This document shows, one piece after another, positions 7,312-54,024 of a DNA stretch of 64,000 nucleotides; the stretch's first letter is position 1; each line of letters starts with the position of its first letter. The translations under genes and the position numbers were made by a program. The stretch covers positions 152,502 to 216,501 of the IMG/VR virus record IMGVR_UViG_3300043219_000566. One strand, given 5' to 3'. The notes under the pieces are model-generated. The model saw only the letters and a program-made list of their open reading frames with translations. It was not told the origin of the DNA and ran no database searches.

Positions 7312-7323
7312 GTAGCGCGCTAC
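7312..7323. repeat. 12-bp palindrome GTAGCGCGCTAC (overlaps portal TAG stop)
   Basis: Exact sequence; one of at least 7 copies. Confidence 0.9.
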
Positions 7324-9134
7324 ATCCCGCCCGGTGCCCCGCCCGGTGCCCCACCCGCCATCTGGGCGATGACCTGGTCCTGACCAACGCTCCGGGCTTG
7401 GCTGCGCATGTTCTGGAGCTTCTGCTTCACCACGGCATGCAGAGTCTCGTCGGTCTGCCGCAACTGGTTGAGCTGGCGTCGTCGCTCACCTTCCGGCATC
7501 GCCAGCAGCTGCTGAGCCATCTGCTCAGCCTGATCGAGCACATCTCCCGGCTGCATCGCCCCTCCGCCACCGCCGCCGCCCGGCATCCCCGGCGCACCAC
7601 CACCAGCAGCCATCGGTGGCATCCCCTGACGGGCCGCGCTGGTTTCGTTCAACCGTCGCTGCATATCCTGCGCCTGCATCTCTTCCTTCTCGATCTTCTG
7701 CTGCTCCTCGCGCAACATGCGTTGCTCGTCGAAGATGCGCCGGATCTCGTCGCGCACGTCGATCCCAAACGGAGCCAACGCCGTCTGATCCGAGATCTTG
7801 TTCGCAGCCGACAACTGCAACCGGACCAACCGCGCTTCCATGTCGTCAGCGCGAGTGACCGGAGTCATACGCCCACGCGCTCGCTCCCAGTTGAAAACCA
7901 TCGAGAGATTTTCGAGCAGCCAGTTTATCCAGTTGTTGAACCCGGCAACCAGGTGCGGCCACGTTGCCTCGAACAGCCGCAAAGCCGGAGGCATGGCCTT
8001 TAGCTCCAACGAGCCCTTGTAGAGATCTGCCGGGACGCCGCACGAATTAAGCAGCTCGTCCAGCGCCACCGTTATCAGCTCGTGCGGTGCAAGCTGATTA
8101 GCCTCGCCGCCCAGCGCCTGATACTCAATTGGAAAAGGCAAACTGTGCATCGCGAGTGGATCACGCCGATGCTCGGCAATCATGCCGCGCACCCGCGACG
8201 AGAAATTGCCCAAGTTAGCGTTCAGCAGCGGATCGACTTTGCCCTGCGGACCGCCCGGACGTCCGGGCGTAACTACGCGCCAGGGCACGATGTAGTCCAT
8301 GGCCAGCGCCTCGTTGTAGCGCTTGAGCACCTGGATGTAGAACCCCTGCTTGAAATTCGACAAGGCCCGTGGGATACCCCAGCCGCGGTTGTGCAGCCCC
8401 GCCAGCGTGTCCTCCTTGAGATGGAACACGATGCCGTCGTTGAACCCGAACAACTGATCCTTCTGGATCGCTTCAATGTATTCCCAGGGGGTGTACTGCA
8501 AATAGAACGGCACGCCACGCTGGATCTGACTTTTGAAATCTTGAGGAATACGCCACAAGTAACGGTGGTCGTGGCTAAGCGGATGGAACAAAATCTCCAT
8601 CTGGTGCGGGCTCCAGCGGATGATCCGCAACCGGTCCTGCTCCATCGAGCGGCGGTCCACCACATCGAACTCGCCGTTGCATTTACACTTCGGGCACTGC
8701 CCGTAGAACTTAAAGCCCCGGAACGTATAGAGCATACGCTCGATCGGACGATCCAACTTGCAGCTCTTGCAACGCAGATAGCGTCGGAACGGAACGAAAA
8801 TGCTCGTAAACGAGTTACCGTAGAACAGAAAATCGAGCCCCACCATCCGCAGTTGCGCAGCGACTCGCAGCGTATCGTCCAGAAATTCGTTGTACTGCTT
8901 CTTGATCTCGTCGGCGACGTCCAGGATCTCGACCTTGGTCAGGAAATACGCACACACGCGCTCCAGCGCCATCCGGTACGTACCGTTGTGCGCCCAGAAC
9001 AACTCACACCAGCGGAGCATGCTCCGCAAGTTGCGAGGCGTGTACATCCCGGAGTAGTCGAGGAAAGGGTCGGGAAACCACTGAACCCCGCCGCTGGACC
9101 CGGACGATGAGTTAGGAACAATGCTATCTGGCAT
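7320..9134 (-). CDS. Portal-like protein with internal CxxC...CxxC zinc ribbon
   Basis: 604 aa; portal-type motifs DFLFYGNSF, WGIP, LLNSCGVPADLYKG; Q/G/M-rich low-complexity C-terminus; CKSC...CPKC insert. Confidence 0.65.
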   Translation of the reverse strand: MPDSIVPNSSSGSSGGVQWFPDPFLDYSGMYTPRNLRSMLRWCELFWAHNGTYRMALERVCAYFLTKVEILDVADEIKKQYNEFLDDTLRVAAQLRMVGLDFLFYGNSFTSIFVPFRRYLRCKSCKLDRPIERMLYTFRGFKFYGQCPKCKCNGEFDVVDRRSMEQDRLRIIRWSPHQMEILFHPLSHDHRYLWRIPQDFKSQIQRGVPFYLQYTPWEYIEAIQKDQLFGFNDGIVFHLKEDTLAGLHNRGWGIPRALSNFKQGFYIQVLKRYNEALAMDYIVPWRVVTPGRPGGPQGKVDPLLNANLGNFSSRVRGMIAEHRRDPLAMHSLPFPIEYQALGGEANQLAPHELITVALDELLNSCGVPADLYKGSLELKAMPPALRLFEATWPHLVAGFNNWINWLLENLSMVFNWERARGRMTPVTRADDMEARLVRLQLSAANKISDQTALAPFGIDVRDEIRRIFDEQRMLREEQQKIEKEEMQAQDMQRRLNETSAARQGMPPMAAGGGAPGMPGGGGGGGAMQPGDVLDQAEQMAQQLLAMPEGERRRQLNQLRQTDETLHAVVKQKLQNMRSQARSVGQDQVIAQMAGGAPGGAPGGM

Positions 9135-9139
9135 AGTTA

Positions 9140-9331
9140 CTATCCGTGACGATTGACAAACCGCGGATTCGAGCCGAGTTCACTCAGCGACTGCTGGCAA
9201 CGGGCTTGCTTCTCCGACGCGCACCGTGGGCACTTCGCCGCGCCGTCTACCAGCACGTTCGCAGTCCCGGCGCAATCAGGCGTGCTGCAAGGCGTCACAG
9301 ATGGTTCAACCACGTTCTTCTTGTTCATCAT
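9140..9331 (-). CDS. Small Cys-rich hypothetical protein
   Basis: GGAGG RBS; C-x4-C...CPRC followed by EKQA. Confidence 0.5.
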   Translation of the reverse strand: MMNKKNVVEPSVTPCSTPDCAGTANVLVDGAAKCPRCASEKQARCQQSLSELGSNPRFVNRHG

Positions 9332-10145
9332 GCTCAACAGCCTCCGGCTGCTCATCTGCGCGGGGCAAAACAACCAGGGTACCGACGCCTGGGATAACTG
9401 TCGTCAGTCCAAAATGCCGAACGGTGAACTCCTTGAAGCTACTGTCGTCCATCGGCACCTTGAGCTTAAACGTCTGGTCCATAGGCGGTTCGTACGCCAA
9501 GTCTCCGTCACCTACCCCGGCAGTATACAAAAGCGCGATGTGTTTCTCGCAAATAATAACGTCCGTCGCCTTAGAGCGGAAGCGACCAAACCCTCCCTCC
9601 AAAACGACCAGCACGAACAACTTAGCGCTTTCTTCCCCCGGCGATTTACGCTCGTCCTCCCGGTCGGGCGACAACGCGGCGCGCAACGTAGCCGCCACGT
9701 TCGGATCAGATAACGCAGCCGCTAGCGCCGTCGCGTCGACCGGCGGCGTAGAAACGACCGCTGGACCAGGAACCGCGACTGGCGTAGTTGTTGCCGGAGC
9801 TGATGGTTGATCACCCACGGGAGCCTCCCTTGCGGGTCGTCCGCTAGTTGGTAGAGGTGGTAACGCACGCGGCACAGCTTGCGCGCAACTCGGCTCGGAA
9901 CGCGATGCCGCCGGATCAGGCGCTGAAGCAGGTTGAACCGGCGACGCGACTGCCTGGCGAACAGGCTCGCCGTCCATCGGCGGATCATCGATCGGCGGCG
10001 GCAAGATCGTCGCGCCCGTGAGCCCCGGCCGACCACCGAAACTGTCCTCGAACGCGTTGGGCACCTTGGTGCCTACGGCCCCAACTTCGACTTCGGAAAC
10101 GACTTCTTTCTTCCAGCCTTGCCCGATGTCTTTGAACTCGGTCAT
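9306..10145 (-). CDS. Hypothetical protein with Pro/Ala-rich linker
   Basis: GGAGGAG RBS + ATG; 279 aa. Confidence 0.7.
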   Translation of the reverse strand: MTEFKDIGQGWKKEVVSEVEVGAVGTKVPNAFEDSFGGRPGLTGATILPPPIDDPPMDGEPVRQAVASPVQPASAPDPAASRSEPSCAQAVPRALPPLPTSGRPAREAPVGDQPSAPATTTPVAVPGPAVVSTPPVDATALAAALSDPNVAATLRAALSPDREDERKSPGEESAKLFVLVVLEGGFGRFRSKATDVIICEKHIALLYTAGVGDGDLAYEPPMDQTFKLKVPMDDSSFKEFTVRHFGLTTVIPGVGTLVVLPRADEQPEAVEHDEQEERG

Positions 10146-16714: not shown

Positions 16715-19700
16715 CTAACCACACGCGCCTTCGCCACAGACAGAGCACTTCTGACAACCTTCGGCCCATACCAGCTCTCCCAGACAATCGAGTGTCTGAC
16801 AAGGCACCCGATACGTGCCGGTCATCGCCATAGCGCTATTCACGCGATCCAAAAAAGCCTGAGAGCGCTCGACCCCGTGTCCGTTGCCGCCAGAGACCTG
16901 CGCCGCAGCTACAACAGAAGAAGCGACAGGCTCGGGCCGCTTGTTCGGACCAGGGCGCACATCGGGCAGCTGGGTCAGAAAACCGTCGTCGTCGCGGAAA
17001 GCCTGGGTCTTAGCGAAATAGCTCAACAGCGCCATAGCCAGCTCGTTGGGTGGGCTAGTAGCCTTGTTGCTGCTGCCGTTACGAGAGGGGTGGTTGCCCA
17101 GCACGTGACTACGCATCTGCTCGATAACCAATTCCAGGCTACCGTCCAAGCGCAAGATCAAACTAGCTAAGCGCCCAAAGACCTCGATCATCGGGTGTAC
17201 GCCGTCGCCGGACCGCCCCAGGTTGAAGAACAGCTCTCGCTCGCGATAGCGCCCATCCGGGGTCAGCTCCAGCGAGATCTGCATGTGCAGATTACCGTAA
17301 GCGCTGTGGTAACGCGTGCGTGTCGCGTGCATGAACTCCGGGATCTCGACCGGAACACGGAAGTGCGGAACATCCGGTACGACCAGGACCTCGTCTTGCT
17401 CGCTGGATTTACTCAACGCCATCGGCTGATTCGCTCGACAGCCGTTTCGGTACACCGTCACGCCCTTGCAACGACTCGCGTAAGCCAGAATGTACGCCTC
17501 GCGCACGCTGCTCTCAGTAGCTTCGTGCGGCATGTTGATCGTCTTGCTGATCGAACTCGTCGTATGTCGCTGAAACGCGGCCTGCATCCGCACGTGCCAC
17601 TCCGGGCTCACATCGCGCGCCGTACGGAAAATCTCCTTCATCGGAGCGGGTACCTTCTTGGCATCCTGCAACGTGCCGTTGTCGAACATGTGCTGCTGTA
17701 GCTCCGGGCTATCGAACTGCTGTTGCTGCGCCAACTCAGCGAAATCGGGATGGCACTCCATCATCGTCTCGCCCCCGAGTATCTGGCGCTGGAACACGAA
17801 GCTGAACAACGGCTCGATGCCGCAGCTAGCGTTGGCGATGATGCTGATCGTGCCGGTCGGGGCCACGCTGGTCACGCAGGCATTACGCAGCGGGCGATCG
17901 AGACGCGCAGCCCAACGACTTTGCTCGTAGTTCTCGAACGCACCCCGTTCCTCTGCTAGACCCTGGCTAGCGCTAATCGCATTGTCGTTGACGAACTTCA
18001 TAAAGCGTTCGCCCCACCGCAAGCCCCCCTCCGAGTCGTAACGCACCCCCAGCCGAATCAACGCATCGGCAAAGCCCATGACGCCCAAGCCGATTTTGCG
18101 ATTGGTGTGGCAAATCCGCTCGATGTTCTCAGTGGGGTAGCGATTCACCGATACCACGTTGTCAAGAAGCCGCGTAGAAGTGCAGATGTCATCCTGCAGC
18201 CGGTCCCAGTCCACCAGATCATCACGCTCGTCCGCGCTAAGACTATCCGGGTTACAGGCATCGGGATGCTCGATGTAAAACGGACGCACGTAGCGCCCTA
18301 AGTTGAGCGAGCCCAAGTTACAGGACTCGTTCGGCATCAGCGGCTGTTCCCCGCAGTTACACGACACCACGCCCGACCACAAGCCCGCAGCAGAATCGCC
18401 GCGGTATTCCGGGTCAACGATCACGTAAGTATGCACATCATCGACGGTCCCGTTGTACACGGCAGCACGCCCAGCTGATCGAATCGCAACCACCTTGTGG
18501 TTGTCTCCGTAATAGCGCCTTACACCATCAGCAATCTTGGCATGCACCTCGGCCGCAGCAGTCTTCCAGCCGTGGCGTCCAAACCCGCCTGCCTCGCGCT
18601 CCGGGTAATGACGGCTATTATGTTCTTCCGGCGTCATAACCCGCAGGTTCTCGGGGCGATTGTTGTCCGGGTTTCTATCGATATGGTCGGTTACAAGGCC
18701 CTCGGGTATTTCTACGCCGAAGCAATCCAGCGCCATGCGATGGACCCACTGATGCGCGCAGCGATTAGCCACCCACGCGTGAGCACGCTGGTGGCCGTCG
18801 CGATGCCGCGAGACTGCGTAAGCCCGAACTGACTGCCCGATCCGCAGGTCTTGCGCCGTGATCTTATTGCCACGAAACGTCCGAAAGTTGTGGCCCGCCG
18901 TACAGCGAACTTTGAGCCCGCTGTCGAACTCGACCTCGATGATGTCTGCGGCGTGCTCTGTTCGCCGAATATCACGCATCATGCGGATTACAGGCAGCTT
19001 AGTATCGGAGTCCCACGCATGAACCAACGTGCTCCCGACGCCGGATTCGACCAGCTCCTCAAATGAACGCGGGCCGTCAATAGTCAAGATCTGCGTATCG
19101 CCAGTTACGCATGGATTAGTAGCTTGGATCAACCCCGCCGCAGGCGTAGCTTCCGACTCCCGGATACGGTCGATGAAGAACAACCCCGGTTCACCGGTCT
19201 GCCAGGCATTCTTGACGATCAAGTCCATCACATCGCCAACCGTCAGATATTGATCCTGCTCTCCAGCGACAATTGCCTGGCCCGTCAGCGTCAGATCCTG
19301 AATGCCGTAGCAAATATCCATCTCCCGCGGCTGCCCGTCGCTGGCAACTCCCGCCTGCACCGCTTTACGGCACCGCTCAACGATCTCTTTGGGTATAAGC
19401 CAGCCGTCCCCCTCGCGATCCGGCCAAGTCACGATGAAAGGCGCTCCCGGACGCTTGGTAACGAGTTCCATGAACTCGTCGTCGACCTTCACGCTGATGT
19501 TGTAGTTCTCGAACTGGCGCAAGTCCTGCTTAGCGAACAGGAACTTGATGATATCGGGATGGTTGACCCGCATCATCGCCATGTTGGCTCCCCGGCGGAA
19601 ACTGCCCTGCTGGATCGCCGACGTAGCCTCGCTGAACACGCGCCAGAACGCAATCGGGCCGCTGGACTGCCCGCCGCTCGAACTGACGAACGCCCCACAG

Positions 19701-20173
19701 GGGCGTAATTCGTCGAAAGCAAAACCGGTGCCACCCCCGGCCTTCTGGATGATGGCCGTGTCCTTGATCGCCTGAAAAATGCCACGAGTATCGTCTGGCA
19801 CCGGCAGCACGAAGCACGCGCTCAACAACCCCATCCGTCTGCCGCTGTTCATCAGCGTTGGACTATTGGGCATGAAGCGGCCGGAGCGCATCAGTTCGTA
19901 GAACCGCCCGCTCCACTCGTCACGCTGCGCCTCGTCCTCGCATCCAGCGACGTGGTCAGCCACGCGCTTGAACATCTCGTCGGGCGTTTCCGTGATCTCC
20001 CGTTCGTTCCGTATGAGATAGCGATTACGCAGAACTCGAACTGCGTTTTCAGTGAGAACTGGAACTTCGGGAACAATAGCCGACGCGGTACGTGACAATG
20101 TTGACACAACCCACTCCTTCGACGCTATGGGTTCGACGCTATTAGCGACCGTACATAAGGTGTACGGCGTCAC
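16715..20173 (-). CDS. nrdJ: Class II (adenosylcobalamin-dependent) ribonucleotide reductase with intein; C-terminal TSCPD-like and Zn-ribbon domains (start codon uncertain)
   Basis: FMPNSPTLMN, LSACFV, GGGTG, RRGANM, GEPG, ATNP/CGE, ESCNLGSLNL, RKIGLGVMG, APTGTISI, SISKTIN, KGVTVYR. Confidence 0.95.
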   Translation of the reverse strand: MTPYTLCTVANSVEPIASKEWVVSTLSRTASAIVPEVPVLTENAVRVLRNRYLIRNEREITETPDEMFKRVADHVAGCEDEAQRDEWSGRFYELMRSGRFMPNSPTLMNSGRRMGLLSACFVLPVPDDTRGIFQAIKDTAIIQKAGGGTGFAFDELRPCGAFVSSSGGQSSGPIAFWRVFSEATSAIQQGSFRRGANMAMMRVNHPDIIKFLFAKQDLRQFENYNISVKVDDEFMELVTKRPGAPFIVTWPDREGDGWLIPKEIVERCRKAVQAGVASDGQPREMDICYGIQDLTLTGQAIVAGEQDQYLTVGDVMDLIVKNAWQTGEPGLFFIDRIRESEATPAAGLIQATNPCVTGDTQILTIDGPRSFEELVESGVGSTLVHAWDSDTKLPVIRMMRDIRRTEHAADIIEVEFDSGLKVRCTAGHNFRTFRGNKITAQDLRIGQSVRAYAVSRHRDGHQRAHAWVANRCAHQWVHRMALDCFGVEIPEGLVTDHIDRNPDNNRPENLRVMTPEEHNSRHYPEREAGGFGRHGWKTAAAEVHAKIADGVRRYYGDNHKVVAIRSAGRAAVYNGTVDDVHTYVIVDPEYRGDSAAGLWSGVVSCNCGEQPLMPNESCNLGSLNLGRYVRPFYIEHPDACNPDSLSADERDDLVDWDRLQDDICTSTRLLDNVVSVNRYPTENIERICHTNRKIGLGVMGFADALIRLGVRYDSEGGLRWGERFMKFVNDNAISASQGLAEERGAFENYEQSRWAARLDRPLRNACVTSVAPTGTISIIANASCGIEPLFSFVFQRQILGGETMMECHPDFAELAQQQQFDSPELQQHMFDNGTLQDAKKVPAPMKEIFRTARDVSPEWHVRMQAAFQRHTTSSISKTINMPHEATESSVREAYILAYASRCKGVTVYRNGCRANQPMALSKSSEQDEVLVVPDVPHFRVPVEIPEFMHATRTRYHSAYGNLHMQISLELTPDGRYRERELFFNLGRSGDGVHPMIEVFGRLASLILRLDGSLELVIEQMRSHVLGNHPSRNGSSNKATSPPNELAMALLSYFAKTQAFRDDDGFLTQLPDVRPGPNKRPEPVASSVVAAAQVSGGNGHGVERSQAFLDRVNSAMAMTGTYRVPCQTLDCLGELVWAEGCQKCSVCGEGACG
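18356..19111 (-). mobile_element. Intein (252 aa) carrying an HNH homing endonuclease, inserted in the RNR NP|CGE active-site motif
   Basis: Starts CVTGDT after ATNP; block B CTAGH; VHR...DHIDRNPDNNRPENL...H HNH motif; block F VYNGTV; ends VVSCN followed by CGEQPL. Confidence 0.93.
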
Positions 20174-20423
20174 TCTTGCTGGCAGTCATTAGGTAGTAGC
20201 AAACTGAGATAAACCGACCGATCCCCGGTAACTCTGTACTGGCATGCACTGTTGCGGGCTGAAAAACGATATGCTCGGCGCGCTCCATCCACCGCTGCAT
20301 CTGGGGCACAACTGGCTCGGTGAGCATGACGTCGGTCTGCTCGTCGATCAACGACCCCTGCACCGGTTTACGCACTCTGCATTCGTTGAATTCCTGAAGA
20401 CGCAACCTGGGGAAAACAAACAT
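20142..20423 (-). CDS. Small hypothetical protein
   Basis: GGAG RBS + ATG upstream of nrdJ. Confidence 0.5.
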   Translation of the reverse strand: MFVFPRLRLQEFNECRVRKPVQGSLIDEQTDVMLTEPVVPQMQRWMERAEHIVFQPATVHASTELPGIGRFISVCYYLMTASKSDAVHLMYGR

Positions 20424-20510
20424 TTGCTCCGCTCCACACTAGCACACACCAGCGACCGTTCTTTAGTCGACACTGCTCAAATGCGCCCAGATAGACGACG
20501 CGCACCAAGC

Positions 20511-20539
20511 AGTATACTCGACCAGGCAAGCCCGTCCAA
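20511..20539 (-). promoter_or_regulatory. Possible sigma70-type promoter for the nrdJ/replication operon
   Basis: TTGGAC-N17-TATACT on the - strand in a ~200-bp intergenic gap; the -35 match is weak. Confidence 0.3.
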
Positions 20540-20621
20540 TCGAGCCAGTCAAGCGCACACACCCCTCCGGTTCCCGCTCCCCGCACAGTTCCAGCCGCCA
20601 CCACCAACCGCCGGAAGCGCG

Positions 20622-21236
20622 CTACTGCAGCTGCCTATACGGAGCAGCCAAGATACGAGAAACCGGAGGGGCGATTTCAACTTGGAAATCGTTCAGCCTG
20701 AATCTCTCGATCCACGCCGAATTACACTTCCCGCAACGCGCGGTGCAACGCGCCAAGTAGCGCGCTACGATTTTGGTCGTCAAGTGCACCGGGCTACCGT
20801 CCTCCAGCCCACACAACGGGCAGGTAAGCTGCGGAATCGCATCGAACTTGAACAACTGCTTCCAAAGCTGCGGTTTCCAGCGCCGGGACGGAGCTGGAGG
20901 ATCGATCGATTGATGATCGCCAGATGGAGACAACGCCTCCATAGAGATGACCTGATGCAGACGCCAGTTGAGTTTCACATCCGAACCGCGGCAACCAAGT
21001 TCGACCTCGTGTCGAATAAAAACCTCGGTGATCTCTCCGCCACAAGAAGCACAACGCACTCGCATCAGCACCGCGTTGGACAACTCTTTGCAGCGCTCAG
21101 GCGGCAGCAGCAGCATGAGCGCTGCCTCACAAAATGGACAGAAACGCTCCTCGCTTTCGAGATAACGAGCGCGGGTCTCCAAGTCGACCGCCGCGTTGAT
21201 GTCGAGTTTATCGACCGCGGACAAGATCATGACCAA
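20622..21236 (-). CDS. Double zinc-ribbon protein
   Basis: CPFC...CASC and CPLC...CGKC. Confidence 0.65.
   Translation of the reverse strand: MVMILSAVDKLDINAAVDLETRARYLESEERFCPFCEAALMLLLPPERCKELSNAVLMRVRCASCGGEITEVFIRHEVELGCRGSDVKLNWRLHQVISMEALSPSGDHQSIDPPAPSRRWKPQLWKQLFKFDAIPQLTCPLCGLEDGSPVHLTTKIVARYLARCTARCGKCNSAWIERFRLNDFQVEIAPPVSRILAAPYRQLQ
20757..20768. repeat. 12-bp palindrome GTAGCGCGCTAC (in frame, encodes VARY)
   Basis: Exact sequence; a 1-mismatch copy at 20614-20625 overlaps the same gene's TAG stop. Confidence 0.9.
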
Positions 21237-21667
21237 AGCCCCCGCGGATGCGTCTTCAGCACCCGCAAATTGGCCTTGCTGGGACGTACGCCCGCATAAC
21301 GTCTTCTGCGCTTGTTCCGTACCCGGCGGATCTTGCGGGGATCACCGGCGCGGCGAGCCACTTGCCCAGAGACGCTGCCTTCCTGAATCACCACAACATC
21401 GACCAGCTTCATCATGTCGTGCCAAATAGCGCCGCAAGTCAAACACTCGTGCTCGATGTAGATCGCGCGATTGTGGAAATCTTCGTGATCAAGGTGAACT
21501 TGGCGACCGTCCAGGTAGACCCCCGGACGCCGCTTCCCGACTTGCTCGTCAATCAGCTCTGTACGCGGGAAATCCAAAACACGCTGACCGATCCGCCCGC
21601 AGTAGGGACAATGATCAGGACGCGACAGGTACAGAGCTTTGGCCGCGTTCATCTGCATTCGATCCAT
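21227..21667 (-). CDS. Zinc-ribbon protein, likely paralog of the downstream gene
   Basis: ALYLSRPDHCPYCG...CLTCGAIW versus ARYLESEERFCPFCE...CASCGGEI. Confidence 0.6.
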   Translation of the reverse strand: MDRMQMNAAKALYLSRPDHCPYCGRIGQRVLDFPRTELIDEQVGKRRPGVYLDGRQVHLDHEDFHNRAIYIEHECLTCGAIWHDMMKLVDVVVIQEGSVSGQVARRAGDPRKIRRVRNKRRRRYAGVRPSKANLRVLKTHPRGLWS

Positions 21668-21962
21668 GCGTAGACTCCGTAGACTCTGTGCTCCTTCCTC
21701 GCTGTGCCGCTAGCTCCTTGTTGTAGGAGCCAAGCGCGACGCGTAGCTCAGGATAAAGCCACGTGTCGTACTGGGAAGACCGTTGCGAAGGTCCAAACGC
21801 CTCCGTAGCTACAACCGCAGCTTTGTCAGCAAGACGCTTCGCCTGGTCGAGATCGTCCGTGAGTTCCTTCACCCTCTGACGCAATGCGACCCGGTCCTCC
21901 TCGTCGATTTCGCCTAACGTTGGTTGTCCAGGCGGAGGACCAAATCCGTCGTTCGTACTCAT
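21615..21962 (-). CDS. Hypothetical coiled-coil protein
   Basis: GAGGAG RBS + ATG. Confidence 0.6.
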   Translation of the reverse strand: MSTNDGFGPPPGQPTLGEIDEEDRVALRQRVKELTDDLDQAKRLADKAAVVATEAFGPSQRSSQYDTWLYPELRVALGSYNKELAAQRGRSTESTESTHGSNADERGQSSVPVAS

Positions 21963-21993
21963 CAGTCTCTCCTCGTTTTAGAAACCAAAAATC

Positions 21994-22005
21994 GTAGCGC
22001 GCTAC
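21994..22005. repeat. 12-bp palindrome GTAGCGCGCTAC (overlaps thyX TAG stop)
   Basis: Exact sequence. Confidence 0.9.
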
Positions 22006-22817
22006 ACCTTGTCGTGCTCGGGCACCCAGGCCCCGTCCTTCTCGACGAAGTCGCCGAACAGGTTGGGCTCGTTGCGGACCAGCTCGCGCGCGATCTTGCG
22101 AAAGACGTGAGCGATCTCCTCCTCAGCCGCCGGGCTAGTGCGCATCGTGACGATGTGGCGCATGGCCCGGACGTTCATCGACCAGAACCCGCCGGTGCAG
22201 CAGCCCATTGGCAATATCCGCCGGAGCATCGAGGTGACTTTCTTCTTCTCGGACATCGGCAGCTTGTCGATTTCCCACGCGCCCGCCAGCTCCTGGTACA
22301 CGTCCTCGATCGTAGTGAATATCTTCACAAAGCTGCGGCGCGTTATCCGCTTCTTCGCGGCCAACACCTCGTCATCGTCGGCGCACTCGCGAAGCGACAG
22401 CGGCAGCCAGACGTCGATACCGCGCTCGATGTTCTGCAAAATGAAGCGCATCGAGCCCTCGCTGATCGCCACGCCCGCCCGGTGCCGGTTCATCTCTCCG
22501 GTGAAAACCCGCGTGACGCCCTCGATCGCGAAGGTGTAGCTGGAGTGCTCCAGAATGCTGCCGTGCTTCGAGCGCAGCACGTTCGCAAAGAACTCTCCCA
22601 GGTCGCGACGCACCCGGGTAACGTTCAGATTAGCTCCAGGCTCGAAACTCATATAACAGCGCTTCGCCGCGCAAGCCGGAACCAGCTCCATGTCAGTCGC
22701 GTTTTCTGGAAGCGCGTGGCTTTCGCACTCCGGAAATTCCCTGATGTAAGCGAGAAGCGCCTCGCGATCGGGAACGCTGTGCTGCACCATCCACACTCGG
22801 ATGTCTTTCCAGTTCAT
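22002..22817 (-). CDS. thyX: FAD-dependent thymidylate synthase
   Basis: HGSILEH, RHRAGVAISEGSMRF (ThyX motif), MNVRAMRHIVTMR, AEEEI. Confidence 0.92.
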   Translation of the reverse strand: MNWKDIRVWMVQHSVPDREALLAYIREFPECESHALPENATDMELVPACAAKRCYMSFEPGANLNVTRVRRDLGEFFANVLRSKHGSILEHSSYTFAIEGVTRVFTGEMNRHRAGVAISEGSMRFILQNIERGIDVWLPLSLRECADDDEVLAAKKRITRRSFVKIFTTIEDVYQELAGAWEIDKLPMSEKKKVTSMLRRILPMGCCTGGFWSMNVRAMRHIVTMRTSPAAEEEIAHVFRKIARELVRNEPNLFGDFVEKDGAWVPEHDKV

Positions 22818-22819
22818 AT

Positions 22820-22945
22820 CTACCTCTCGATATAGTCGGCTACTTCACAGCGGCGGCAGCGCACGAACGCCACAGTCCCGCTGCGATGCACCTCGTCCCA
22901 GCTGTGCCAGCCCAGCCAACACAGCAACCGGCCGAACCACTTCAT
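22820..22945 (-). CDS. Tiny DUF1660-like Zn-binding phage protein
   Basis: RLLCWLGWHSW...CRRC. Confidence 0.55.
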   Translation of the reverse strand: MKWFGRLLCWLGWHSWDEVHRSGTVAFVRCRRCEVADYIER

Positions 22946-23181: not shown

Positions 23182-23195
23182 AGGTCACCTCATTC

Positions 23196-23783: not shown

Positions 23784-23790
23784 AGCTACC

Positions 23791-25015: not shown

Positions 25016-25024
25016 GGGCAGCTC

Positions 25025-26668: not shown

Positions 26669-26671
26669 AGA

Positions 26672-27646: not shown

Positions 27647-27662
27647 AGTTACTCTCCAGCAG

Positions 27663-28373
27663 TCACACGCAGCACAGCCGACAAATACGGTGCTCCAGCA
27701 CCTCATTCCACAGCTCACGACTTAGCTGCTCCGCGCGCTTGTGAGGACCAAACTCGATCGCAACACAATCTTCCCCGAGGTAAGGATACTCCGCCCGCAC
27801 CGCCAGCATCCGCCGGTAACAGGCGTCCAGCTGCTCCATGCGCCGTCGGCCTTCCTGCTCAAACACGTCCGGGCGATCTCCAGACACCTGGTGCCAGCGT
27901 TCGATAGCCAACTCGACGTCCGCCAACAACACAATCGTGATGTCGGGGACGAAGGAATTGCAGATCCGCAACAACGCCGTGATGTTCTCACGCCCTGAGT
28001 AATCGCCGAATTTCTCTCGATACTCTCTAGTTCCAGCCGCCTGCTCGAAGGCATCCTCACCGTAGGCGTAGAAGCTCGCTGAATAGCGATCGAGCACAAC
28101 GATATCGCCCACAGCAACATAATGACGCACCGTGGTGATCAACTCGCACCGCGCAGCCATGTACAACATCATCCGCGTCATCGGGTTGCCCCAGTCCGCG
28201 AACCGCGCCAGCGGACGAAGCTGCAAATGCGCGGAATGCTGCTCGTGCACACCGGGGTCCTGCAGCAGATGAACACCCCGGTCGGGATACTCGTCACGCA
28301 ACCGAGCAAGCAGTGCTCGGGCCTGAGTAGTCTTGCCTACGCCGTTTAGCCCTTCAAAACAAACGATCGCCAT
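27663..28373 (-). CDS. tmk: Thymidylate kinase-like nucleotide monophosphate kinase
   Basis: FEGLNGVGKTTQ P-loop, LYMAAR, VLDRYSASFYAY, VPDITIVL. Confidence 0.88.
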   Translation of the reverse strand: MAIVCFEGLNGVGKTTQARALLARLRDEYPDRGVHLLQDPGVHEQHSAHLQLRPLARFADWGNPMTRMMLYMAARCELITTVRHYVAVGDIVVLDRYSASFYAYGEDAFEQAAGTREYREKFGDYSGRENITALLRICNSFVPDITIVLLADVELAIERWHQVSGDRPDVFEQEGRRRMEQLDACYRRMLAVRAEYPYLGEDCVAIEFGPHKRAEQLSRELWNEVLEHRICRLCCV

Positions 28374-28864
28374 CAGTGGTCATCCTCCTGCTCGAACAGA
28401 TCAAATGGATCGCGCACTCCGTCCGGCAGAGCTTCCTTGAGTAAAAAGGCCAGCTGAGACCTCCGCTGGTCCCACAGCTTCTTCACCTCCGGGTTCCGCA
28501 GCTGCGCGCTGTTCTCCAGCAGCGCCAACAAGAACACGACGTCGCAGGCTGGCAGACTCAGCACCAACACCTTATCAACGTCGTCAACCTCCTCACCGAC
28601 GAGGCACGGGAGACGCGCCTCCAACCGCGTCACCGCCAGTTTCTTACCCCGGATCTCGCCGAGCAACAAGCGATAGCTAGTGCCCGTGGCATCCCGCGTG
28701 CGCTCCAGAGTAAATCCCCCGAACTTGGCCTCACGCAAGTGCCGCGCGCGGCGAACACCCTTCTCTCCGCAGCGCCGCCGTAGCTCATCGGCAGAGTGCC
28801 ACTTCCCGTCCTTCAGCACCGCGAACGCACCGTACGCGCTGCCATCAATGGTCTTGGTAGGCAT
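28373..28864 (-). CDS. Hypothetical protein, N-terminal winged-helix-like
   Basis: LKDGKWHSADEL...RRARHLRE..FGG. Confidence 0.55.
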   Translation of the reverse strand: MPTKTIDGSAYGAFAVLKDGKWHSADELRRRCGEKGVRRARHLREAKFGGFTLERTRDATGTSYRLLLGEIRGKKLAVTRLEARLPCLVGEEVDDVDKVLVLSLPACDVVFLLALLENSAQLRNPEVKKLWDQRRSQLAFLLKEALPDGVRDPFDLFEQEDDH

Positions 28865-28874: not shown

Positions 28875-28886
28875 GTAGCGCGCTAC
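28875..28886. repeat. 12-bp palindrome GTAGCGCGCTAC (overlaps TAG stop; extends to 14 bp)
   Basis: cGTAGCGCGCTACg. Confidence 0.9.
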
Positions 28887-32321: not shown

Positions 32322-33296
32322 TCATACCGCGCCCCCGATTATTCGCAGAATGTGTCTAGCCGCGACCGGAAGCGACAACTCCCGCTCATAGTACTCCCGC
32401 GGGCGGAACGATCTCCAGTCGCCCAGCACTTCGGAGAGAACTTTCACAAACGTGTCCTTGGTGAAGGTACGTCCCGTCTCAGGCGTGATGTATTGGCTGT
32501 GCCAGAGCCGCGTGCCCTCCGAGACAACGATCGGAGTATCGCAGGCCAGAGCCTCGGGAATCACCCGCGGGCAGCTGTCCTTGCCCGCCGTCATCACTAC
32601 GGCGACCTTGGCGCGCGCGTACAGACTCGGCAAGTCAGCACGCCGTACCCAGCCAGTGAAGCTAGTATTGGGAAATTTAGCAGGCCAGCCCCGCCGTCCG
32701 ATTCCCACGTGCAGCAAACGCACCCCGCGCAAATTCGGCAACAGAAAACGATGGCCCTTATTGGCGTTGTGGTTGAAATTGGCCACGTAGATCACGTCGA
32801 ACTCGGGATGAGCAGATATCGGGGAAGCAGGCCGGAAGATATTGTCGGCCGCCGGTTTGACGAACAACTGCGCGTTGTAGCCGTTAGCTTGCGCCCGCTC
32901 CAGCTGCTCGGGTGTGTCTACCAGCACCAGATCCCAGTGCTGCCTCGGCCCGGGGATCACCCGCTGCCCGGCCCCGTAGTGGATCTTGAAGGCCTTCGGG
33001 AACTGCGCAGCCTTGGCCCGATGGATTTTGAAGCCGCCGCGGGTGAACACGACATCCGGGTCAAAGGACACCGGCGTCTGAGCGTAGCGCGCTACCCAGC
33101 GCTCCACGAAGTTCTCGCGGTACTGCGCCCTCCGCTTGCCCTTCTCGTACCACACCTCGCCGTAGCCGCCCGTCTGGTTGACCAGCTCCCAGGCCAGTTG
33201 CGTCCACATGTCGTCGTTCTGCTCCAGCTTGTCGAACATGATCTGACGCGCCGGACGATCGCTAGGCACTTGCCCGCGCAGGAATAACAGTTTCAT
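32322..33296 (-). CDS. GT-B glycosyltransferase (GT4-like)
   Basis: FDVIYVA...KGH...FTGWV...DSCPRVIPEALACDTPIVV. Confidence 0.85.
   Translation of the reverse strand: MKLLFLRGQVPSDRPARQIMFDKLEQNDDMWTQLAWELVNQTGGYGEVWYEKGKRRAQYRENFVERWVARYAQTPVSFDPDVVFTRGGFKIHRAKAAQFPKAFKIHYGAGQRVIPGPRQHWDLVLVDTPEQLERAQANGYNAQLFVKPAADNIFRPASPISAHPEFDVIYVANFNHNANKGHRFLLPNLRGVRLLHVGIGRRGWPAKFPNTSFTGWVRRADLPSLYARAKVAVVMTAGKDSCPRVIPEALACDTPIVVSEGTRLWHSQYITPETGRTFTKDTFVKVLSEVLGDWRSFRPREYYERELSLPVAARHILRIIGGAV
33084..33095. repeat. 12-bp palindrome GTAGCGCGCTAC (in frame, encodes VARY)
   Basis: Exact sequence. Confidence 0.9.
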
Positions 33297-33677: not shown

Positions 33678-33692
33678 ACCGATCTCCCTTTG

Positions 33693-34463: not shown

Positions 34464-34496
34464 GCCGGATCTCCAGAGCACAACGAGTATGGCTTA

Positions 34497-34817: not shown

Positions 34818-34838
34818 CGAACACCTCCATCATGCGTA

Positions 34839-42840: not shown

Positions 42841-43566
42841 CTACTCGTGGGGCAAGTCTCCCCGCCTCAACTTCTCCAGGAACAACTCCAAGTCCTCGGG
42901 AATCCCAATCGCGTGATGAACCTCCGCCGGAATGCGGTAGACCACCACCTTTGAGCCTGCCTTGATCATGGCGTTGTACGTCGGGCACACGTACGGCTCG
43001 CCATCGTGAGCGCGTTCACCGGTCTGAGCAGCTCGAATGAAGTCCCGCCCGTGACGCCACCAGTGAATGCCGTTGCTGGCGATATCGCTGATGACCCGCT
43101 TCTCGACGATAAGGTCGACGACGTCGTTGTCGTCGACGCGCACGAAGCAGTCCGTCGCCCGACTGCACGGATAGCAAACCACGATGCCGTCTGCGCTAGT
43201 GTGCTCGATGAAAGTCAGAAAGCGCTGCGGGTTCCACGTCATGTACTGATCGCAGTTGGCGATCACCAGCTCGTCGTCGTTGTTGATCAACGCCACAGCC
43301 TGTATGCACGTGTCTGCCGGTCCAGCGGTATCGTCGACAATCACGATCTCCGCCTCGGGATAGTGCTCCAGCACGACCGCATCGATCCCGTAGCGCCTCA
43401 CATGCTCACGATGCAGACAGAAAATCAACCGACCCGGCAGATCCAACGTATCGACCGCCCGCTTGAACATCGGCTCCCCCGCCACGTCGATAAGAGGTTT
43501 GATCGTGTCGATGTTGCCGAACCGCGCTCCACGGCCTGCCATAGGGATAAGAACGTTCCTGCTCAT
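42841..43566 (-). CDS. Sugar-phosphate nucleotidyltransferase
   Basis: IPMAGRGARF, KPLIDV.GEPM, T.GPA.T, IANCDQ, IVEK, IGIPEDL. Confidence 0.9.
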   Translation of the reverse strand: MSRNVLIPMAGRGARFGNIDTIKPLIDVAGEPMFKRAVDTLDLPGRLIFCLHREHVRRYGIDAVVLEHYPEAEIVIVDDTAGPADTCIQAVALINNDDELVIANCDQYMTWNPQRFLTFIEHTSADGIVVCYPCSRATDCFVRVDDNDVVDLIVEKRVISDIASNGIHWWRHGRDFIRAAQTGERAHDGEPYVCPTYNAMIKAGSKVVVYRIPAEVHHAIGIPEDLELFLEKLRRGDLPHE

Positions 43567-44477
43567 CAGCTCTCCAATCGTGTAACGAATTCGCGCATCC
43601 GTTCAGCCCGCGTACCGAACTTCGCGTGCAGCAACTCCACCATATTGGTATTGAGACGCTGCCGCAAACTCTCATCTCGCAACAACCGCGAAACGTAACG
43701 AGCCGCAGTATCGATGTCGCGCGCCGGGTAAACCAACGCAGTCTGCTCGTGGATAGCGTAGTCCTGCATCCCGCTGCGCGGGTGATCGGTACAGACCAGC
43801 GCGCAGCCCGCCAGCGCCGCCTCGATCGGTGGATTGTGCAGGCCCTCCAGCTCGGTGGGCGCAAACCAGACCTTCAGTCCGTTGTACCAGTTGTTCAGCC
43901 GCTCCGGAGTCGGACGCTTGATATGGCGATTGAGCTGCTGGATCGGCTGATCAAGCTGACGTTCGAGAAAGTCGATGTCGCCGTTGCGCTTGGTCGCATG
44001 GCGATTGTTGCGCAGAGCCCCCGCCCCGGCCCGCACGCGCGGAACCAGGTGAAACCAGTGCGGGTCCAGCCCCGGGTACTGCAGCATCACCGAGATCCCG
44101 TACTCTCGCATGTAGGCGTAGAGCCACTGGGAGTTCACGAAGACGCGATCGACCGCCCGAAACGAGCGCAGTAACGTCGCCTCGGTGGCTTTCCACAGCT
44201 CCAGGCCGCGCACGTAGTAGGTCTGCAACCGAGCGGAAGTGTAGCGCGCTACAGATCTGACGCTGTTGATCCCGGTCGCGATGGTCACGTCGCAGGGCGG
44301 ATGCGTCTCGCCCCCGATGCACTCGATCTTCGCCGGATGCCAAGTGTAACGGCTACGTCCACAATGAAAGAAGGCCTTGTGCCCTAGCTCGCGCAGCGTC
44401 TCCACGCAACGCACCAGCGTACGGGAGCCGCCGTTGTTAGCTAGCCCCACGCCGCGCATGTTAAAGCAAATTCTCAT
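43566..44477 (-). CDS. GT-B glycosyltransferase (GT4-like)
   Basis: NNGGSRTL, VNSQWL, EGLHNPPIEAALAGC. Confidence 0.85.
   Translation of the reverse strand: MRICFNMRGVGLANNGGSRTLVRCVETLRELGHKAFFHCGRSRYTWHPAKIECIGGETHPPCDVTIATGINSVRSVARYTSARLQTYYVRGLELWKATEATLLRSFRAVDRVFVNSQWLYAYMREYGISVMLQYPGLDPHWFHLVPRVRAGAGALRNNRHATKRNGDIDFLERQLDQPIQQLNRHIKRPTPERLNNWYNGLKVWFAPTELEGLHNPPIEAALAGCALVCTDHPRSGMQDYAIHEQTALVYPARDIDTAARYVSRLLRDESLRQRLNTNMVELLHAKFGTRAERMREFVTRLES
44241..44252. repeat. 12-bp palindrome GTAGCGCGCTAC (in frame, VARY; extends to 14 bp)
   Basis: tGTAGCGCGCTACa. Confidence 0.9.
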
Positions 44478-52720: not shown

Positions 52721-53513
52721 GGTCGGGCTCCTTCAGCCACGCGGGGATCTCGGTCAGCACCCAGCCACTACGCTCGTCGTCAGAGTACCTGGGCTTGTAC
52801 TGCGGCGGATTCGCATCCGGCGTAAACACCGCCATCAGAGCATTGGCCCGCGCCACCCGACCGTAGCTAGCCCACGCCGGAGTACCGACGCGCTGCCAGG
52901 CGTAACGCAGCGACAACAGGTGGCACAGAACTTGTGTGCTGGGCCGATAGCCCAAGTCGCACAGCTCCCAGCTGTCCGAGCCAAACAGCTCGGGCATCTC
53001 GTTCAACATGGTTCCGCAGCTGTGCGGATCGTCGCACTCGGATCGCAGCCAGGCTTTCATCAACGACACCACGTTGTGGACGGAAACACCGCGCTCGCGC
53101 TCGATAAGCTTTCCGGCCCACTCAGCGGGATTCTGGTCCTCCGGCACGTTCTCCATCAGGTGCTGCCACAATCTCTCGGCCATCAGCTCCGAGTCCCACT
53201 CCCGGCCGCCACGCCCAGTATCGCTAGCAAGACACTTCTCGGCGAAGTAGCCCATGCCGAGCCCGGCTAGCCACTGGAAACTGATGACATCGGACCAGCG
53301 GTAGACCGCGTCACCCAGGTCACCGTAGACCATGAGCGTGCTGTGCCGGATAACGAAGCAGCAACAGTTGATGGTGCTCTTGGGGTTGCGCCAGTCCAGC
53401 ATGAACAACACGGTGCCGTCCGGATTGACCATCTTCCGGAAGCGGGCTTCGTGTCCGTTCTGCTGCTCGGCCAGATTGTTACAGTCATCTTTGTGACGTT
53501 GCAGAGCGGACAT
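52617..53513 (-). CDS. Hypothetical phage protein
   Basis: LMVYGDLGDAVYRW...YFAEK; GGAGG RBS. Confidence 0.65.
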   Translation of the reverse strand: MSALQRHKDDCNNLAEQQNGHEARFRKMVNPDGTVLFMLDWRNPKSTINCCCFVIRHSTLMVYGDLGDAVYRWSDVISFQWLAGLGMGYFAEKCLASDTGRGGREWDSELMAERLWQHLMENVPEDQNPAEWAGKLIERERGVSVHNVVSLMKAWLRSECDDPHSCGTMLNEMPELFGSDSWELCDLGYRPSTQVLCHLLSLRYAWQRVGTPAWASYGRVARANALMAVFTPDANPPQYKPRYSDDERSGWVLTEIPAWLKEPDHEKAAEDAPGGGRAGAGNTGTPAVGRRGKAKRSR

Positions 53514-54000
53514 AGATTTCCTCCGGGTTCCAGATGTTCCTCTTGTAAGAATCGGCCAGGACCTGCACCGGCGAAAGCTCGTTGCGCATCCAGTTCAGCG
53601 GAACTTCGGCCGAGATCAACGCAGTCTCCGAGTGTTTCGCACCGATACGCCAGTCGATCGAGCGCGCGTTGATTTCCAAGCGATCCCAGCCGACGCTACC
53701 AAAAGCATACTCGGGAATTGCCAGATTCCGCACAACCAAGATATCGCTGTTCGTAACCTCCTCGTAGACTTGCTCGCACTCGCTGCACCAGCCAAATATA
53801 GCCGGAGACCACTCGTAGTACGTCAGCTCACACAAGCCCCGATCCACGCCCCGTAAAGAGTTCAGCAGCGCGATGCGCGCAGCCATCCAGCCCACCAGCT
53901 CAGGCGAGAAATCGATCACCATCACGTCTTCGCCATCGTAGCCCTCGTAGTTCGCTGACAACCGCGCCAAGAGAGCGTACGGGTAGCGTCTCATTTCCAT
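53485..54000 (-). CDS. Hypothetical protein
   Basis: GAGGTGA RBS + ATG. Confidence 0.65.
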   Translation of the reverse strand: MEMRRYPYALLARLSANYEGYDGEDVMVIDFSPELVGWMAARIALLNSLRGVDRGLCELTYYEWSPAIFGWCSECEQVYEEVTNSDILVVRNLAIPEYAFGSVGWDRLEINARSIDWRIGAKHSETALISAEVPLNWMRNELSPVQVLADSYKRNIWNPEEIYVRSATSQR

Positions 54001-54012
54001 GGTTCACCTCGT

Positions 54013-54024
54013 GTAGCGCGCTAC
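54013..54024. repeat. 12-bp palindrome GTAGCGCGCTAC (overlaps TAG stop)
   Basis: Exact sequence. Confidence 0.9.

What the first reader, a model, noticed from the sequence alone, without database searches (positions are those of the whole stretch)
7312..54024. Dispersed perfect 12-bp palindrome GTAGCGCGCTAC embedded in stop codons and codons
Seen: exact copies at 7312, 20757, 21994, 28875, 33084, 44241 and 54013, plus a 1-mismatch copy at 20614 (a by-eye scan may have missed more). Four exact copies and the near copy use the TAG as a gene's stop codon. The other three lie in frame as Val-Ala-Arg-Tyr in unrelated proteins. A rough hand estimate at about 62% GC gives about 0.01 expected copies per 64 kb. 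It has no loop or U-tract, so it is not a terminator. Inference: a selected cis-signal tolerated inside genes, such as a dimeric protein binding site (parS/matS-like genome organisation, repressor, packaging or recombination site), an element for the phage RNAP, or a HIP1-like iterated palindrome.
Basis: seen in the sequence. Interest (0 to 1): 0.75.

Follow-up and report, generated by a model that had tools for sequence, protein, structure and literature searches.

The report
Conserved dispersed palindrome in jumbo phages
A perfect 12-base palindrome is kept in about 20 exact, unusually evenly spaced copies across a 216-kb uncultivated marine phage genome and its closest relatives, inside genes and on stop codons alike, so it is almost certainly a selected docking site for a symmetric phage protein whose role is still unknown.

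Summary
The window holds 7 exact copies and 1 near copy. The whole 216.5-kb phage genome holds 20 exact copies, against about 0.03-0.06 expected. It is the commonest 12-mer, and no other 12-mer palindrome exceeds 2 copies. A null that keeps every protein sequence and the codon usage expects 0.17 copies inside genes; 9 are seen.

The motif marks one clade of uncultivated jumbo phages that carry their own multisubunit RNA polymerase. A 45%-GC relative has the same core 34 times. The sister genome and another contig carry only the symmetric variant GTAACGCGTTAC. Several sites sit at orthologous places while their flanks have diverged. Thirty-seven other relatives show no excess.

Spacing is more even than random in all three genomes (combined P 2e-5). 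RNA folding is no better than for shuffled sequence. No ParB, DNA methyltransferase, Vsr, RAYT transposase or topoisomerase II was detected.

Best reading: genome-wide double-stranded DNA sites read by a phage-encoded homodimer. This resembles stoperator or KorB operator sets and shares some properties with HIP1. The use of TAG as a stop codon looks like a by-product of tight gene packing and rare GTA/CTA codons. A clade-specific winged-helix protein (window 28373-28864) is a weak candidate reader. The function is unproven.

The parts
7312..7323 (.). Exact palindrome. Its minus-strand TAG is the stop of the 604-aa gene at 7320-9134(-). On the minus strand it is followed by a T-run and a sigma-70-like TTGGGA-N18-TAGAAT.
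   Evidence: The sister genome G001 has GTAACGCGTTAC at the same gene end.
20614..20625 (.). One-mismatch copy, GAAGCGCGCTAC. It supplies the TAG stop of the gene at 20622-21236(-).
20757..20768 (.). Exact palindrome read in frame as Val-Ala-Arg-Tyr at residue 155 of the gene at 20622-21236(-).
21994..22005 (.). Exact palindrome. It supplies the TAG stop of the ThyX gene at 22002-22817(-) and is followed by GATTTTTGG.
28875..28886 (.). Exact palindrome. It supplies the TAG stop of the gene at 28883-29728(-), a nucleoside 2-deoxyribosyltransferase-like and PFK-like fusion. It lies 10 nt upstream of the ATG of the winged-helix gene.
33084..33095 (.). Exact palindrome read in frame as VARY at residue 68 of the glycosyltransferase gene at 32322-33296(-). 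The G003 orthologue reads VDRY (GTG GAT AGA TAC) and has no motif there.
44241..44252 (.). Exact palindrome read in frame as VARY at residue 70 of the glycosyltransferase gene at 43566-44459(-). The G003 orthologue carries the motif 13 nt further on, in the other reading frame.
54013..54024 (.). Exact palindrome. It supplies the TAG stop of the HNH endonuclease gene at 54021-55082(-) and lies 12 nt upstream of the ATG of the gene at 53485-54000(-).
28373..28864 (-). Candidate reader of the motif (inferred, weak). It is a 163-aa protein with an N-terminal winged helix, a helical C-terminal domain and an acidic tail.
   Evidence: The AlphaFold2 model has pLDDT 92.5 and an H-H-H-strand-strand winged-helix topology. 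The nearest Atlas clusters are phage HTH_39 and HTH_11 winged helices. An HMM finds the family in the motif-bearing G000 and G003 but not in G002, G005 or G006. Six further contigs encoding homologues of 10 kb or less gave four with the motif; L350 (10.5 kb) and L351 (5.5 kb) have none.

Best explanation
GTAGCGCGCTAC (core TAGCGCGCTA) is most likely a selected recognition site on double-stranded DNA for a symmetric, probably homodimeric, sequence-specific protein. The protein would be encoded by this clade of uncultivated marine jumbo phages.

The sites act at the DNA level, whatever the strand or reading frame, and they are kept at fairly regular intervals of about one per 5-10 kb. The genome places them where they cost least. 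In this 60%-GC genome GTA and CTA codons are rare, so the cheapest places are gene ends, where the motif's TAG doubles as the stop codon. In a 45%-GC relative most copies lie inside genes.

The most likely role is a dispersed operator set for a global regulator or architectural protein. That would work like mycobacteriophage stoperators or plasmid KorB operators. The winged-helix protein at window 28373-28864 is the best, still weak, candidate reader.

Shown here: non-randomness, DNA-level constraint, conservation within the clade, a symmetric allele switch, site retention at orthologous places, and even spacing. Inferred: that a protein dimer reads the site, which protein it is, and what binding achieves.
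For: 1. Excess. There are 20 exact copies against 0.03-0.06 expected. Inside genes there are 9 against 0.17 expected with the proteins and codon usage held fixed. In G003 the figures are 28 against 0.29, and in G001 6 against 0.08.
2. All 12 positions are fixed and flanks are not conserved beyond one more base. Exact copies outnumber one-mismatch copies 20 to 6.
3. The same core occurs 34 times in G003, which has 45% GC and a median 41% protein identity to this genome. A host-specific factor or a compositional cause is therefore unlikely.
4. The sister genome G001 and contig L227 carry only GTAACGCGTTAC, with the same change in both half-sites. Genomes are all-G or all-A with few hybrids: 21+3, 34+3, 8/8 and 6/6.
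5. Four of 6 comparable sites lie at the same place in G000 and G001 (P 1.5e-8), and 2 of 9 in G000 and G003 (P 0.003). These include a variable protein linker, an Ala-to-Thr change forced by the allele switch, and a shift of frame in a conserved glycosyltransferase.
6. G003, G000 and G001 form one clade (support 99/95). Thirty-seven other relatives show no excess.
7. Spacing is more even than random in all three genomes (combined P 2e-5).
8. RNA hairpins are no more stable than in shuffled sequence.
9. Cluster A mycobacteriophages are a precedent for a whole set of dispersed sites changing together with its reader (PMC6550527).
Against: No binding has been shown and the reader protein is not identified.

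- About 49 genes share the winged-helix gene's pattern of presence and absence. The winged-helix gene is only one of them.
- The winged helix's recognition helix does not differ between G-type and A-type genomes. Only one wing residue differs, Arg in G-type and Gln in the A-type contig L227. That is a single observation, and the one attempt to test it was uninformative.
- In G003, 27-28 of the 34 copies lie inside genes, by two counting rules, with no bias towards gene starts or ends. This does not fit classical promoter operators.
- Even spacing, conservation of sites and occurrence in coding DNA are also properties of HIP1, whose function is probably not repression (PMC13756078).
- Pfam found no helix-turn-helix domain in about 75 proteins scanned, apart from one Xre-like gene unique to this genome.
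Confidence: 0.5

Rival explanations
1. A HIP1-like iterated palindrome. Here the word would be kept up by an enzymatic process, such as a methyltransferase with biased repair, or would serve as a genome identity tag. For example, it could mark phage DNA for the neighbouring nucleotide or DNA-modification module, or tell phage DNA from host DNA. It would not be an operator.
For: The motif occurs in coding and non-coding DNA in two frames, sites are conserved at orthologous places, and spacing is quasi-regular. The same properties are reported for HIP1 (PMC13756078). All sites of a genome switched allele together. The clade-specific genes include a module of ThyX, a dTMP-kinase-like gene, a deoxyribosyltransferase-like gene, a SIS-domain gene and at least 6 glycosyltransferases, next to the winged-helix gene.
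Against: No C5 or N4/N6 DNA methyltransferase and no Vsr was detected in any clade genome. Density is one per 6-10 kb, which I recall to be far lower than for HIP1. One-mismatch copies exceed chance (6 against 1.5; 17 against 1.1) rather than being swept away, as a conversion drive would predict.
Confidence: 0.17
2. Target sites of a site-specific nuclease, nickase or recombinase. These could be regularly spaced nicks as in T5, recombination or replication-initiation hot spots, or packaging-related cuts.
For: The site is dyad-symmetric like those of dimeric nucleases, spacing is even, and the genome holds several HNH endonuclease genes. One of these ends in a palindrome copy.
Against: No nuclease is conserved across the clade and specific to it: the HNH gene at 54021-55082 has no G003 orthologue. 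Cuts at a palindrome on both strands would break the genome into about 20 pieces. No topoisomerase II or Y1 transposase was found.
Confidence: 0.1
3. An RNA-level element. The transcribed palindrome would form a small hairpin (4-5 bp stem, CGCG loop) that terminates transcription, directs RNA processing, or tunes translation of the next gene.
For: Eleven of 21 core (10-bp) copies in this genome lie at gene ends (P 5e-6). Three or four are followed by a T-run, and four lie 2-13 nt before the next start codon. The G-to-A and C-to-T allele switch keeps base pairing.
Against: Folding energies equal those of shuffled sequence (z from -1.6 to +0.5), and the palindrome's own hairpin is often not the best fold. 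A hairpin would not need all 12 bases fixed in every copy. Most copies in G003 and G001 lie inside genes at no preferred position. Enrichment at gene ends is absent in G003 (P 0.35). The terminator scan of 19000-35000 flags none of the five copies there.
Confidence: 0.07
4. A promoter or other signal read directly by the phage's own multisubunit RNA polymerase.
For: The phage encodes a fused beta/beta' RNA polymerase, and some copies lie in intergenic regions upstream of genes.
Against: A perfectly symmetric signal has no direction, yet 255 of 264 called genes lie on one strand. Most copies in relatives are inside genes. Separate sigma-70-like and TATA-rich elements lie downstream of several copies, and one of them is conserved in G001 without the palindrome.
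Confidence: 0.05

Closest known systems
Stoperators of Cluster A mycobacteriophages (L5, Bxb1)
   Same: There are two to three dozen copies of a 12-14-bp word spread over the whole phage genome, often touching stop and start codons. Related phages carry distinct versions of the word that go with distinct readers (PMC6550527; PMC9283540, title and abstract).
   Different: Stoperators are asymmetric, oriented with transcription, read by a monomeric immunity repressor of temperate phages, and mostly intergenic. Here the word is a perfect palindrome in a probably lytic 216-kb phage. Many copies are inside genes, and no repressor is known.
HIP1 (GCGATCGC) of cyanobacteria
   Same: A perfect palindrome is over-represented in coding and non-coding DNA, conserved at orthologous sites and quasi-periodic (PMC13756078; PMC4390886, abstract).
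   Different: HIP1 is 8 bp, is far denser (from my own knowledge), and is tied to two orphan DNA methyltransferases. Here the word is 12 bp, occurs once per 6-10 kb, lies in a virus, and no methyltransferase was detected.
KorB operators (O_B, TTTAGCSGCTAAA) of IncP plasmids, and parS/ParB sites
   Same: From my own knowledge: about a dozen copies of a 13-bp palindrome with TAGC/GCTA half-sites are spread over a replicon. Some lie far from promoters or inside genes. They are read by a dimeric global regulator.
   Different: KorB is a ParB-family protein, and no ParB N-terminal domain was detected in any clade genome. The spacing between half-sites also differs.
Conserved inverted repeats of Streptomyces phage phiC31, and the 17-bp palindromes of Cluster O mycobacteriophages
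   Same: From my own knowledge: multiple copies of one dyad-symmetric 17-bp word are dispersed in a phage genome. In phiC31 they are bound by the repressor.
   Different: Those are longer, mostly intergenic, and found in 40-70-kb phages of actinobacteria. I did not test the comparison here.

Membership tests
Stoperator-type dispersed operator set | Tens of copies of one 12-14-bp word dispersed over the phage genome, far above chance | tested here: met
   There are 20 exact copies against 0.03-0.06 expected.
Stoperator-type dispersed operator set | Asymmetric word with a fixed orientation relative to transcription | tested here: not met
   The word is a perfect palindrome with no asymmetric flank conservation.
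Stoperator-type dispersed operator set | Sites mainly in short intergenic gaps at gene boundaries | tested here: inconclusive
   Met in G000 (11 of 21, P 5e-6). Not met in G003 (6 of 34, P 0.35) or G001 (2 of 8, P 0.09).
Stoperator-type dispersed operator set | The word differs between related phages together with its reader protein | tested here: inconclusive
The word differs, as G-type against A-type, and is fixed within each genome. One Arg-to-Gln difference in the candidate winged helix is a single observation.
Stoperator-type dispersed operator set | Bound by the phage's repressor, blocking transcription elongation | not testable with these tools
   This needs EMSA, DAP-seq or transcription assays.
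HIP1-like iterated palindrome | A palindrome over-represented in coding and non-coding DNA, conserved at orthologous positions and quasi-regularly spaced | tested here: met
HIP1-like iterated palindrome | Cognate DNA methyltransferase(s) recognising the inner part of the word | tested here: not met
   No hit to PF00145 or PF01555 in G000, G001, G003, G002 or G006. D12-class (Dam) and host enzymes were not tested.
parS / KorB O_B sites | A ParB-family reader encoded on the same replicon | tested here: not met
   No hit to PF02195 in G000-G003, while the search hits 11 of 14 control genomes.
Intrinsic terminator | A stable G+C-rich hairpin followed by a U-tract | tested here: not met
   RNA folding z is about 0 at seven sites. 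Only three or four copies have a T-run. The terminator scan of 19000-35000 flags none of the five copies there.
REP elements with a RAYT transposase | Extragenic hairpin repeats starting with GTAG, together with a Y1 (RAYT) transposase gene | tested here: not met
   The word does begin with GTAG. But it is only 12 bp, is often inside genes, and no PF01797 hit was found.

The most novel reading that the evidence does not exclude
The palindrome could be an evenly spaced 'self' tag on the phage chromosome. A clade-specific winged-helix protein would read it. That protein is always encoded next to a module of a dTMP-kinase-like gene, a deoxyribosyltransferase-like gene, glycosyltransferases and ThyX. 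The tag could direct or license DNA modification, or tell phage DNA from host DNA. This would be a viral counterpart of HIP1 or of DNA-uptake sequences, not an operator set.
Probability: 0.12. Interest if true: 0.85.

Novelty: new variant of a known kind. Interest (0 to 1): 0.62.

Why it matters
Dispersed operator-like words are known from small temperate phages and from plasmids. This one differs in several respects:
- It is a perfect palindrome in a clade of roughly 200-kb uncultivated marine phages that carry their own RNA polymerase.
- It is held exact against codon preference.
- It is spaced more evenly than chance.
- It has switched as a complete set between two symmetric alleles.

It offers a clean and testable handle on a genome-wide DNA-protein system in jumbo phages, which could concern global silencing, chromosome organisation or a DNA identity tag.

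Tried and rejected
**Database and literature searches**
- The phage collection has no nucleotide match. The nearest named phages by RNA polymerase are Salmonella phage Arash and Vibrio phages D69, D181 and D148, at 31% identity.
- A literature search for the word itself found nothing.
- The 14-mer in IMG/VR gave 76 stretches with one site each. Only one, G003, proved to be a relative.
- In 185,579 species genomes the same 14-mer gave scattered single sites and no enriched host.
- The only sequencing run that holds the window is one marine-sediment DNA run stored as contigs. No read-end or RNA evidence was possible, and read laying was not used.

**Searches for a reader or enzyme**
- Pfam and PHROGs scans of about 75 proteins found metabolic and replication genes but no conserved helix-turn-helix domain.
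- No ParB, C5 or N4/N6 methyltransferase, topoisomerase II, Y1 transposase, Vsr or HTH_39 was detected.
- The single HTH_3 hit, at window 23196-23783, is unique to G000.

**Tests of the winged-helix candidate**
- Complex prediction with two copies of the winged-helix protein plus DNA was not folded. It is no evidence either way.
- A profile search of the PDB gave only insignificant hits.
- The test of the Arg/Gln wing idea failed for lack of sequence: the contig encoding P0020 is 10 kb and holds no site.

**Searches for more relatives**
- Searches of IMG/VR with P0011, P0020 and the glycosyltransferase found no new relatives.
- The metagenome scan added one A-type contig, L355, and a 34%-GC relative without sites.

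**Other**
- G005's abundant 29-mer turned out to be a CRISPR-like array, not a counterpart of the palindrome.
- One search was a mistyped reference and should be ignored.

Full report
**Observation.** Dinucleotide-preserving shuffles give a mean of 0.29 matches at up to one mismatch, and none of 100 shuffles reaches 8. The window is bases 152,502-216,501 of a 216,501-bp IMG/VR virus record with 59.7% GC. The whole record has 20 exact copies, 6 one-mismatch copies and 28 two-mismatch copies.

GTAGCGCGCTAC is the most abundant 12-mer in the genome. The next unrelated word has 5 copies, and the other 55 palindromic 12-mers that occur have at most 2. Markov models of order 1-6 expect 0.02-0.38 copies. 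With the sites masked, orders 2-4 expect 0.03-0.06 exact and about 1.5 one-mismatch copies. Permuting synonymous codons among all positions of the same amino acid keeps every protein and the codon usage. It gives 0.17 copies inside genes against 9 observed.

**Gene context.** My own ORF and codon-usage caller puts 255 of 264 genes on the minus strand. Of the 20 exact copies:
- 8 supply the TAG stop of a gene, at motif bases 2-4;
- 3 lie 2-5 nt after a stop;
- 7 are read as GTA GCG CGC TAC (Val-Ala-Arg-Tyr);
- 2 are read in the other open frame, xGT AGC GCG CTA.

The genes involved are unrelated to one another. They are a 604-aa unknown, ThyX, a deoxyribosyltransferase-like fusion, an HNH endonuclease, two glycosyltransferases and a 202-aa unknown.

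**What kind of genome.** The phage encodes a fused beta/beta' multisubunit RNA polymerase (1,465 aa) plus a separate beta' C-terminal gene. It also encodes a family A DNA polymerase fused to a UDG-like domain, and a ribonucleotide reductase carrying an intein with HNH. The nearest named phages share only 31% identity in the polymerase. About 80 IMG/VR contigs of 150-235 kb encode the most conserved protein of the family. The only sequencing run that holds the window is a marine-sediment metagenome.

**Relatives.** Four facts stand out.

1. Record G003 (202.6 kb, 45% GC) shares 102-107 collinear genes with this genome at a median 41% identity. It has the core TAGCGCGCTA 34 times, 19 of them as the exact 12-mer.
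2. G001 is an 85-kb fragment whose RNA polymerase is 72% identical. It has none of these, but has GTAACGCGTTAC 8 times. That is the same word with G4 changed to A and, symmetrically, C9 changed to T.
3. Further metagenome contigs of the same clade were recognised by synteny. They carry the G-type (L225, L228), the A-type (L227 with 6 copies in 16 kb; L355) or one of each (L222). Genomes are essentially all-G or all-A, with few hybrids.
4. A maximum-likelihood tree of the conserved protein places G003 with G000+G001 in one clade (support 99/95). Thirty-seven other large relatives show no excess of TANCGCGNTA over a reversed control. The sister-clade genome G006 has no dispersed palindrome.

The motif is therefore a shared derived feature of one clade. 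It is kept across hosts with presumably very different base composition, which argues for a phage-encoded reader.

**Site conservation.** In the region that G001 covers, 4 of 6 G000 sites have the A-type word at the same place (binomial P 1.5e-8). These four are the stop of the 604-aa gene, the start of the gene after G000:99,986, a variable linker of a protease-like gene, and a VARY that becomes VTRY. In the last case the allele switch forced an Ala-to-Thr replacement.

Two of 9 comparable sites are shared with G003 (P 0.003). One lies in the same frame in the variable linker. The other lies in a well-conserved glycosyltransferase, but 13 nt away and in the other reading frame. Flanking DNA is not conserved, and only one more base on each side shows a preference. 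The DNA word, not the peptide, is what is kept.

**Where sites are placed.** Enrichment at gene ends is strong in G000 (11 of 21 copies, P 5e-6). It is absent in G003 (6 of 34, P 0.35) and marginal in G001 (2 of 8, P 0.09). GTA and CTA make up 11% of Val and 6% of Leu codons in G000, but 36% and 21% in G003.

The simplest reading is that position relative to genes does not matter for function. In the GC-rich genome the cheapest place for a word containing TA is just past a gene, where TAG can serve as the stop. One copy (G000:71,909) even supplies the stops of two convergent genes. What does seem to matter is distribution. The coefficient of variation of spacing is 0.64, 0.63 and 0.29 in G000, G003 and G001. 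That is lower than in random placements (P 0.028, 0.0026 and 0.002; combined 2e-5).

**What it is not.**
- RNA folding of seven sites is no better than for shuffled sequence, and the motif's own hairpin is often not the best fold. Only three or four copies are followed by a T-run. A hairpin would not require all twelve bases to be identical in every copy.
- A symmetric word is a poor candidate for a promoter in a genome transcribed in one direction. Separate sigma-70-like elements lie downstream of some copies, such as TTGAGG-N18-TATACT. That one is conserved in G001 without the palindrome.
- No ParB, C5 or N4/N6 methyltransferase, Vsr, Y1 transposase or topoisomerase II was detected in the clade.
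- One-mismatch copies exceed chance rather than being depleted. This gives no support to a conversion-type drive.

**Candidate reader.** Forty-nine G000 genes have an orthologue in G003 but none in G002, G005 or G006. Most have no Pfam match.

One of them, at window 28373-28864, starts 10 nt after the palindrome at 28875. Its AlphaFold2 model has pLDDT 92.5. The model shows a canonical winged helix followed by a helical domain and an acidic tail. The nearest Atlas clusters are phage HTH_39 and HTH_11 winged helices, with a feature score of 0.91 for residues 1-80 and TM 0.6-0.7.

Its family comprises about 23 clusters in public metagenomes. In every contig that extends past the gene, it sits just upstream of a dTMP-kinase-like gene. 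The longer contigs also show DUF4406, SIS, glycosyltransferase, ThyX and RNR genes nearby. An HMM of the family finds it only in the motif-bearing complete genomes.

This co-occurrence is confounded by phylogeny. The recognition helix does not differ between G-type and A-type genomes. A wing residue is Arg in G-type genomes and Gln in the one A-type contig that encodes the protein. That fits the usual Arg-G and Gln-A preference, but it is a single observation, and the attempt to test it lacked sequence. I treat this protein as a lead only.

**Comparison with known systems.** The nearest functional analogues are mycobacteriophage stoperators. These are dispersed, touch stop codons, and come in distinct versions with distinct repressors in related phages (PMC6550527). 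They are, however, asymmetric, oriented and read by a monomer (PMC9283540).

KorB operators share the TAGC/GCTA half-sites and a dispersed, partly intragenic layout (from my own knowledge), but no ParB domain is present here. HIP1 shares the palindromic form, the occurrence in coding DNA, the site conservation and the quasi-periodic spacing (PMC13756078). It is shorter, denser and tied to methyltransferases that were not found here.

I therefore file the motif as a new variant of the dispersed recognition-site kind. It is not a member of any of these families.

**Verdict.** The feature is real and strongly selected, and it is specific to this clade. It is most likely a double-stranded DNA site for a phage-encoded homodimer acting genome-wide. 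What that binding does remains open: global silencing or roadblock, chromosome organisation, or an identity or modification tag.

Noticed in passing
Related record G005 (IMGVR_UViG_3300017991_000001), loci L210-L220, about 4.4-5.9 kb from one end: A CRISPR-like array in a 211-kb relative. The 29-nt repeat GTCGCACCCACGCGTATAGGGAAGATTGG recurs with a 61-bp period, at least 17 times, with unique spacers of about 32 nt.
   Followed up: partly
Related record G002 (IMGVR_UViG_3300044712_001462), loci L109-L120: A different dispersed word, the 18-bp quasi-palindrome TCTAATAGCGATAACAGA. It occurs 10 times, in both orientations, always between a stop codon and the next ribosome-binding site. It shares a TAGCG half-site with the palindrome and may be a diverged counterpart.
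   Followed up: partly
G000:71909-71920 (outside the window; locus L085): One palindrome copy supplies the TAG stop codons of two convergent genes at once, one on each strand.
   Followed up: yes
window 20000-48600, minus strand: A clade-specific module. It holds the winged-helix gene, a dTMP-kinase-like gene, a nucleoside 2-deoxyribosyltransferase (DUF4406) and PFK-like fusion, a SIS-domain gene, at least six glycosyltransferases, ThyX and a MazG-like gene. This suggests nucleotide-sugar or DNA hypermodification chemistry.
   Followed up: partly
window 16715-19975 (-): The ribonucleotide reductase large subunit is interrupted by an intein with an HNH endonuclease domain.
   Followed up: no
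window 23196-23783 (-): A 195-aa protein with an N-terminal Xre-type HTH and a C-terminal part like sigma-factor region 4. No homologue was found in G003, G001, G002 or G006.
   Followed up: partly
G000:144740-144900 (locus L090), after the RNA polymerase beta' C-terminal gene; also window 7260-7310: Sigma-70-like promoters lie just downstream of palindrome copies. TTGAGG-N18-TATACT is conserved in G001 without the palindrome, and TTGGGA-N18-TAGAAT follows the copy at window 7312.
   Followed up: partly
window 1-797 (-), continuing upstream to G000:148901: A single 1,465-aa gene fuses RNA polymerase beta with the N-terminal part of beta'. The rest of beta' is a separate 607-aa gene.
   Followed up: no
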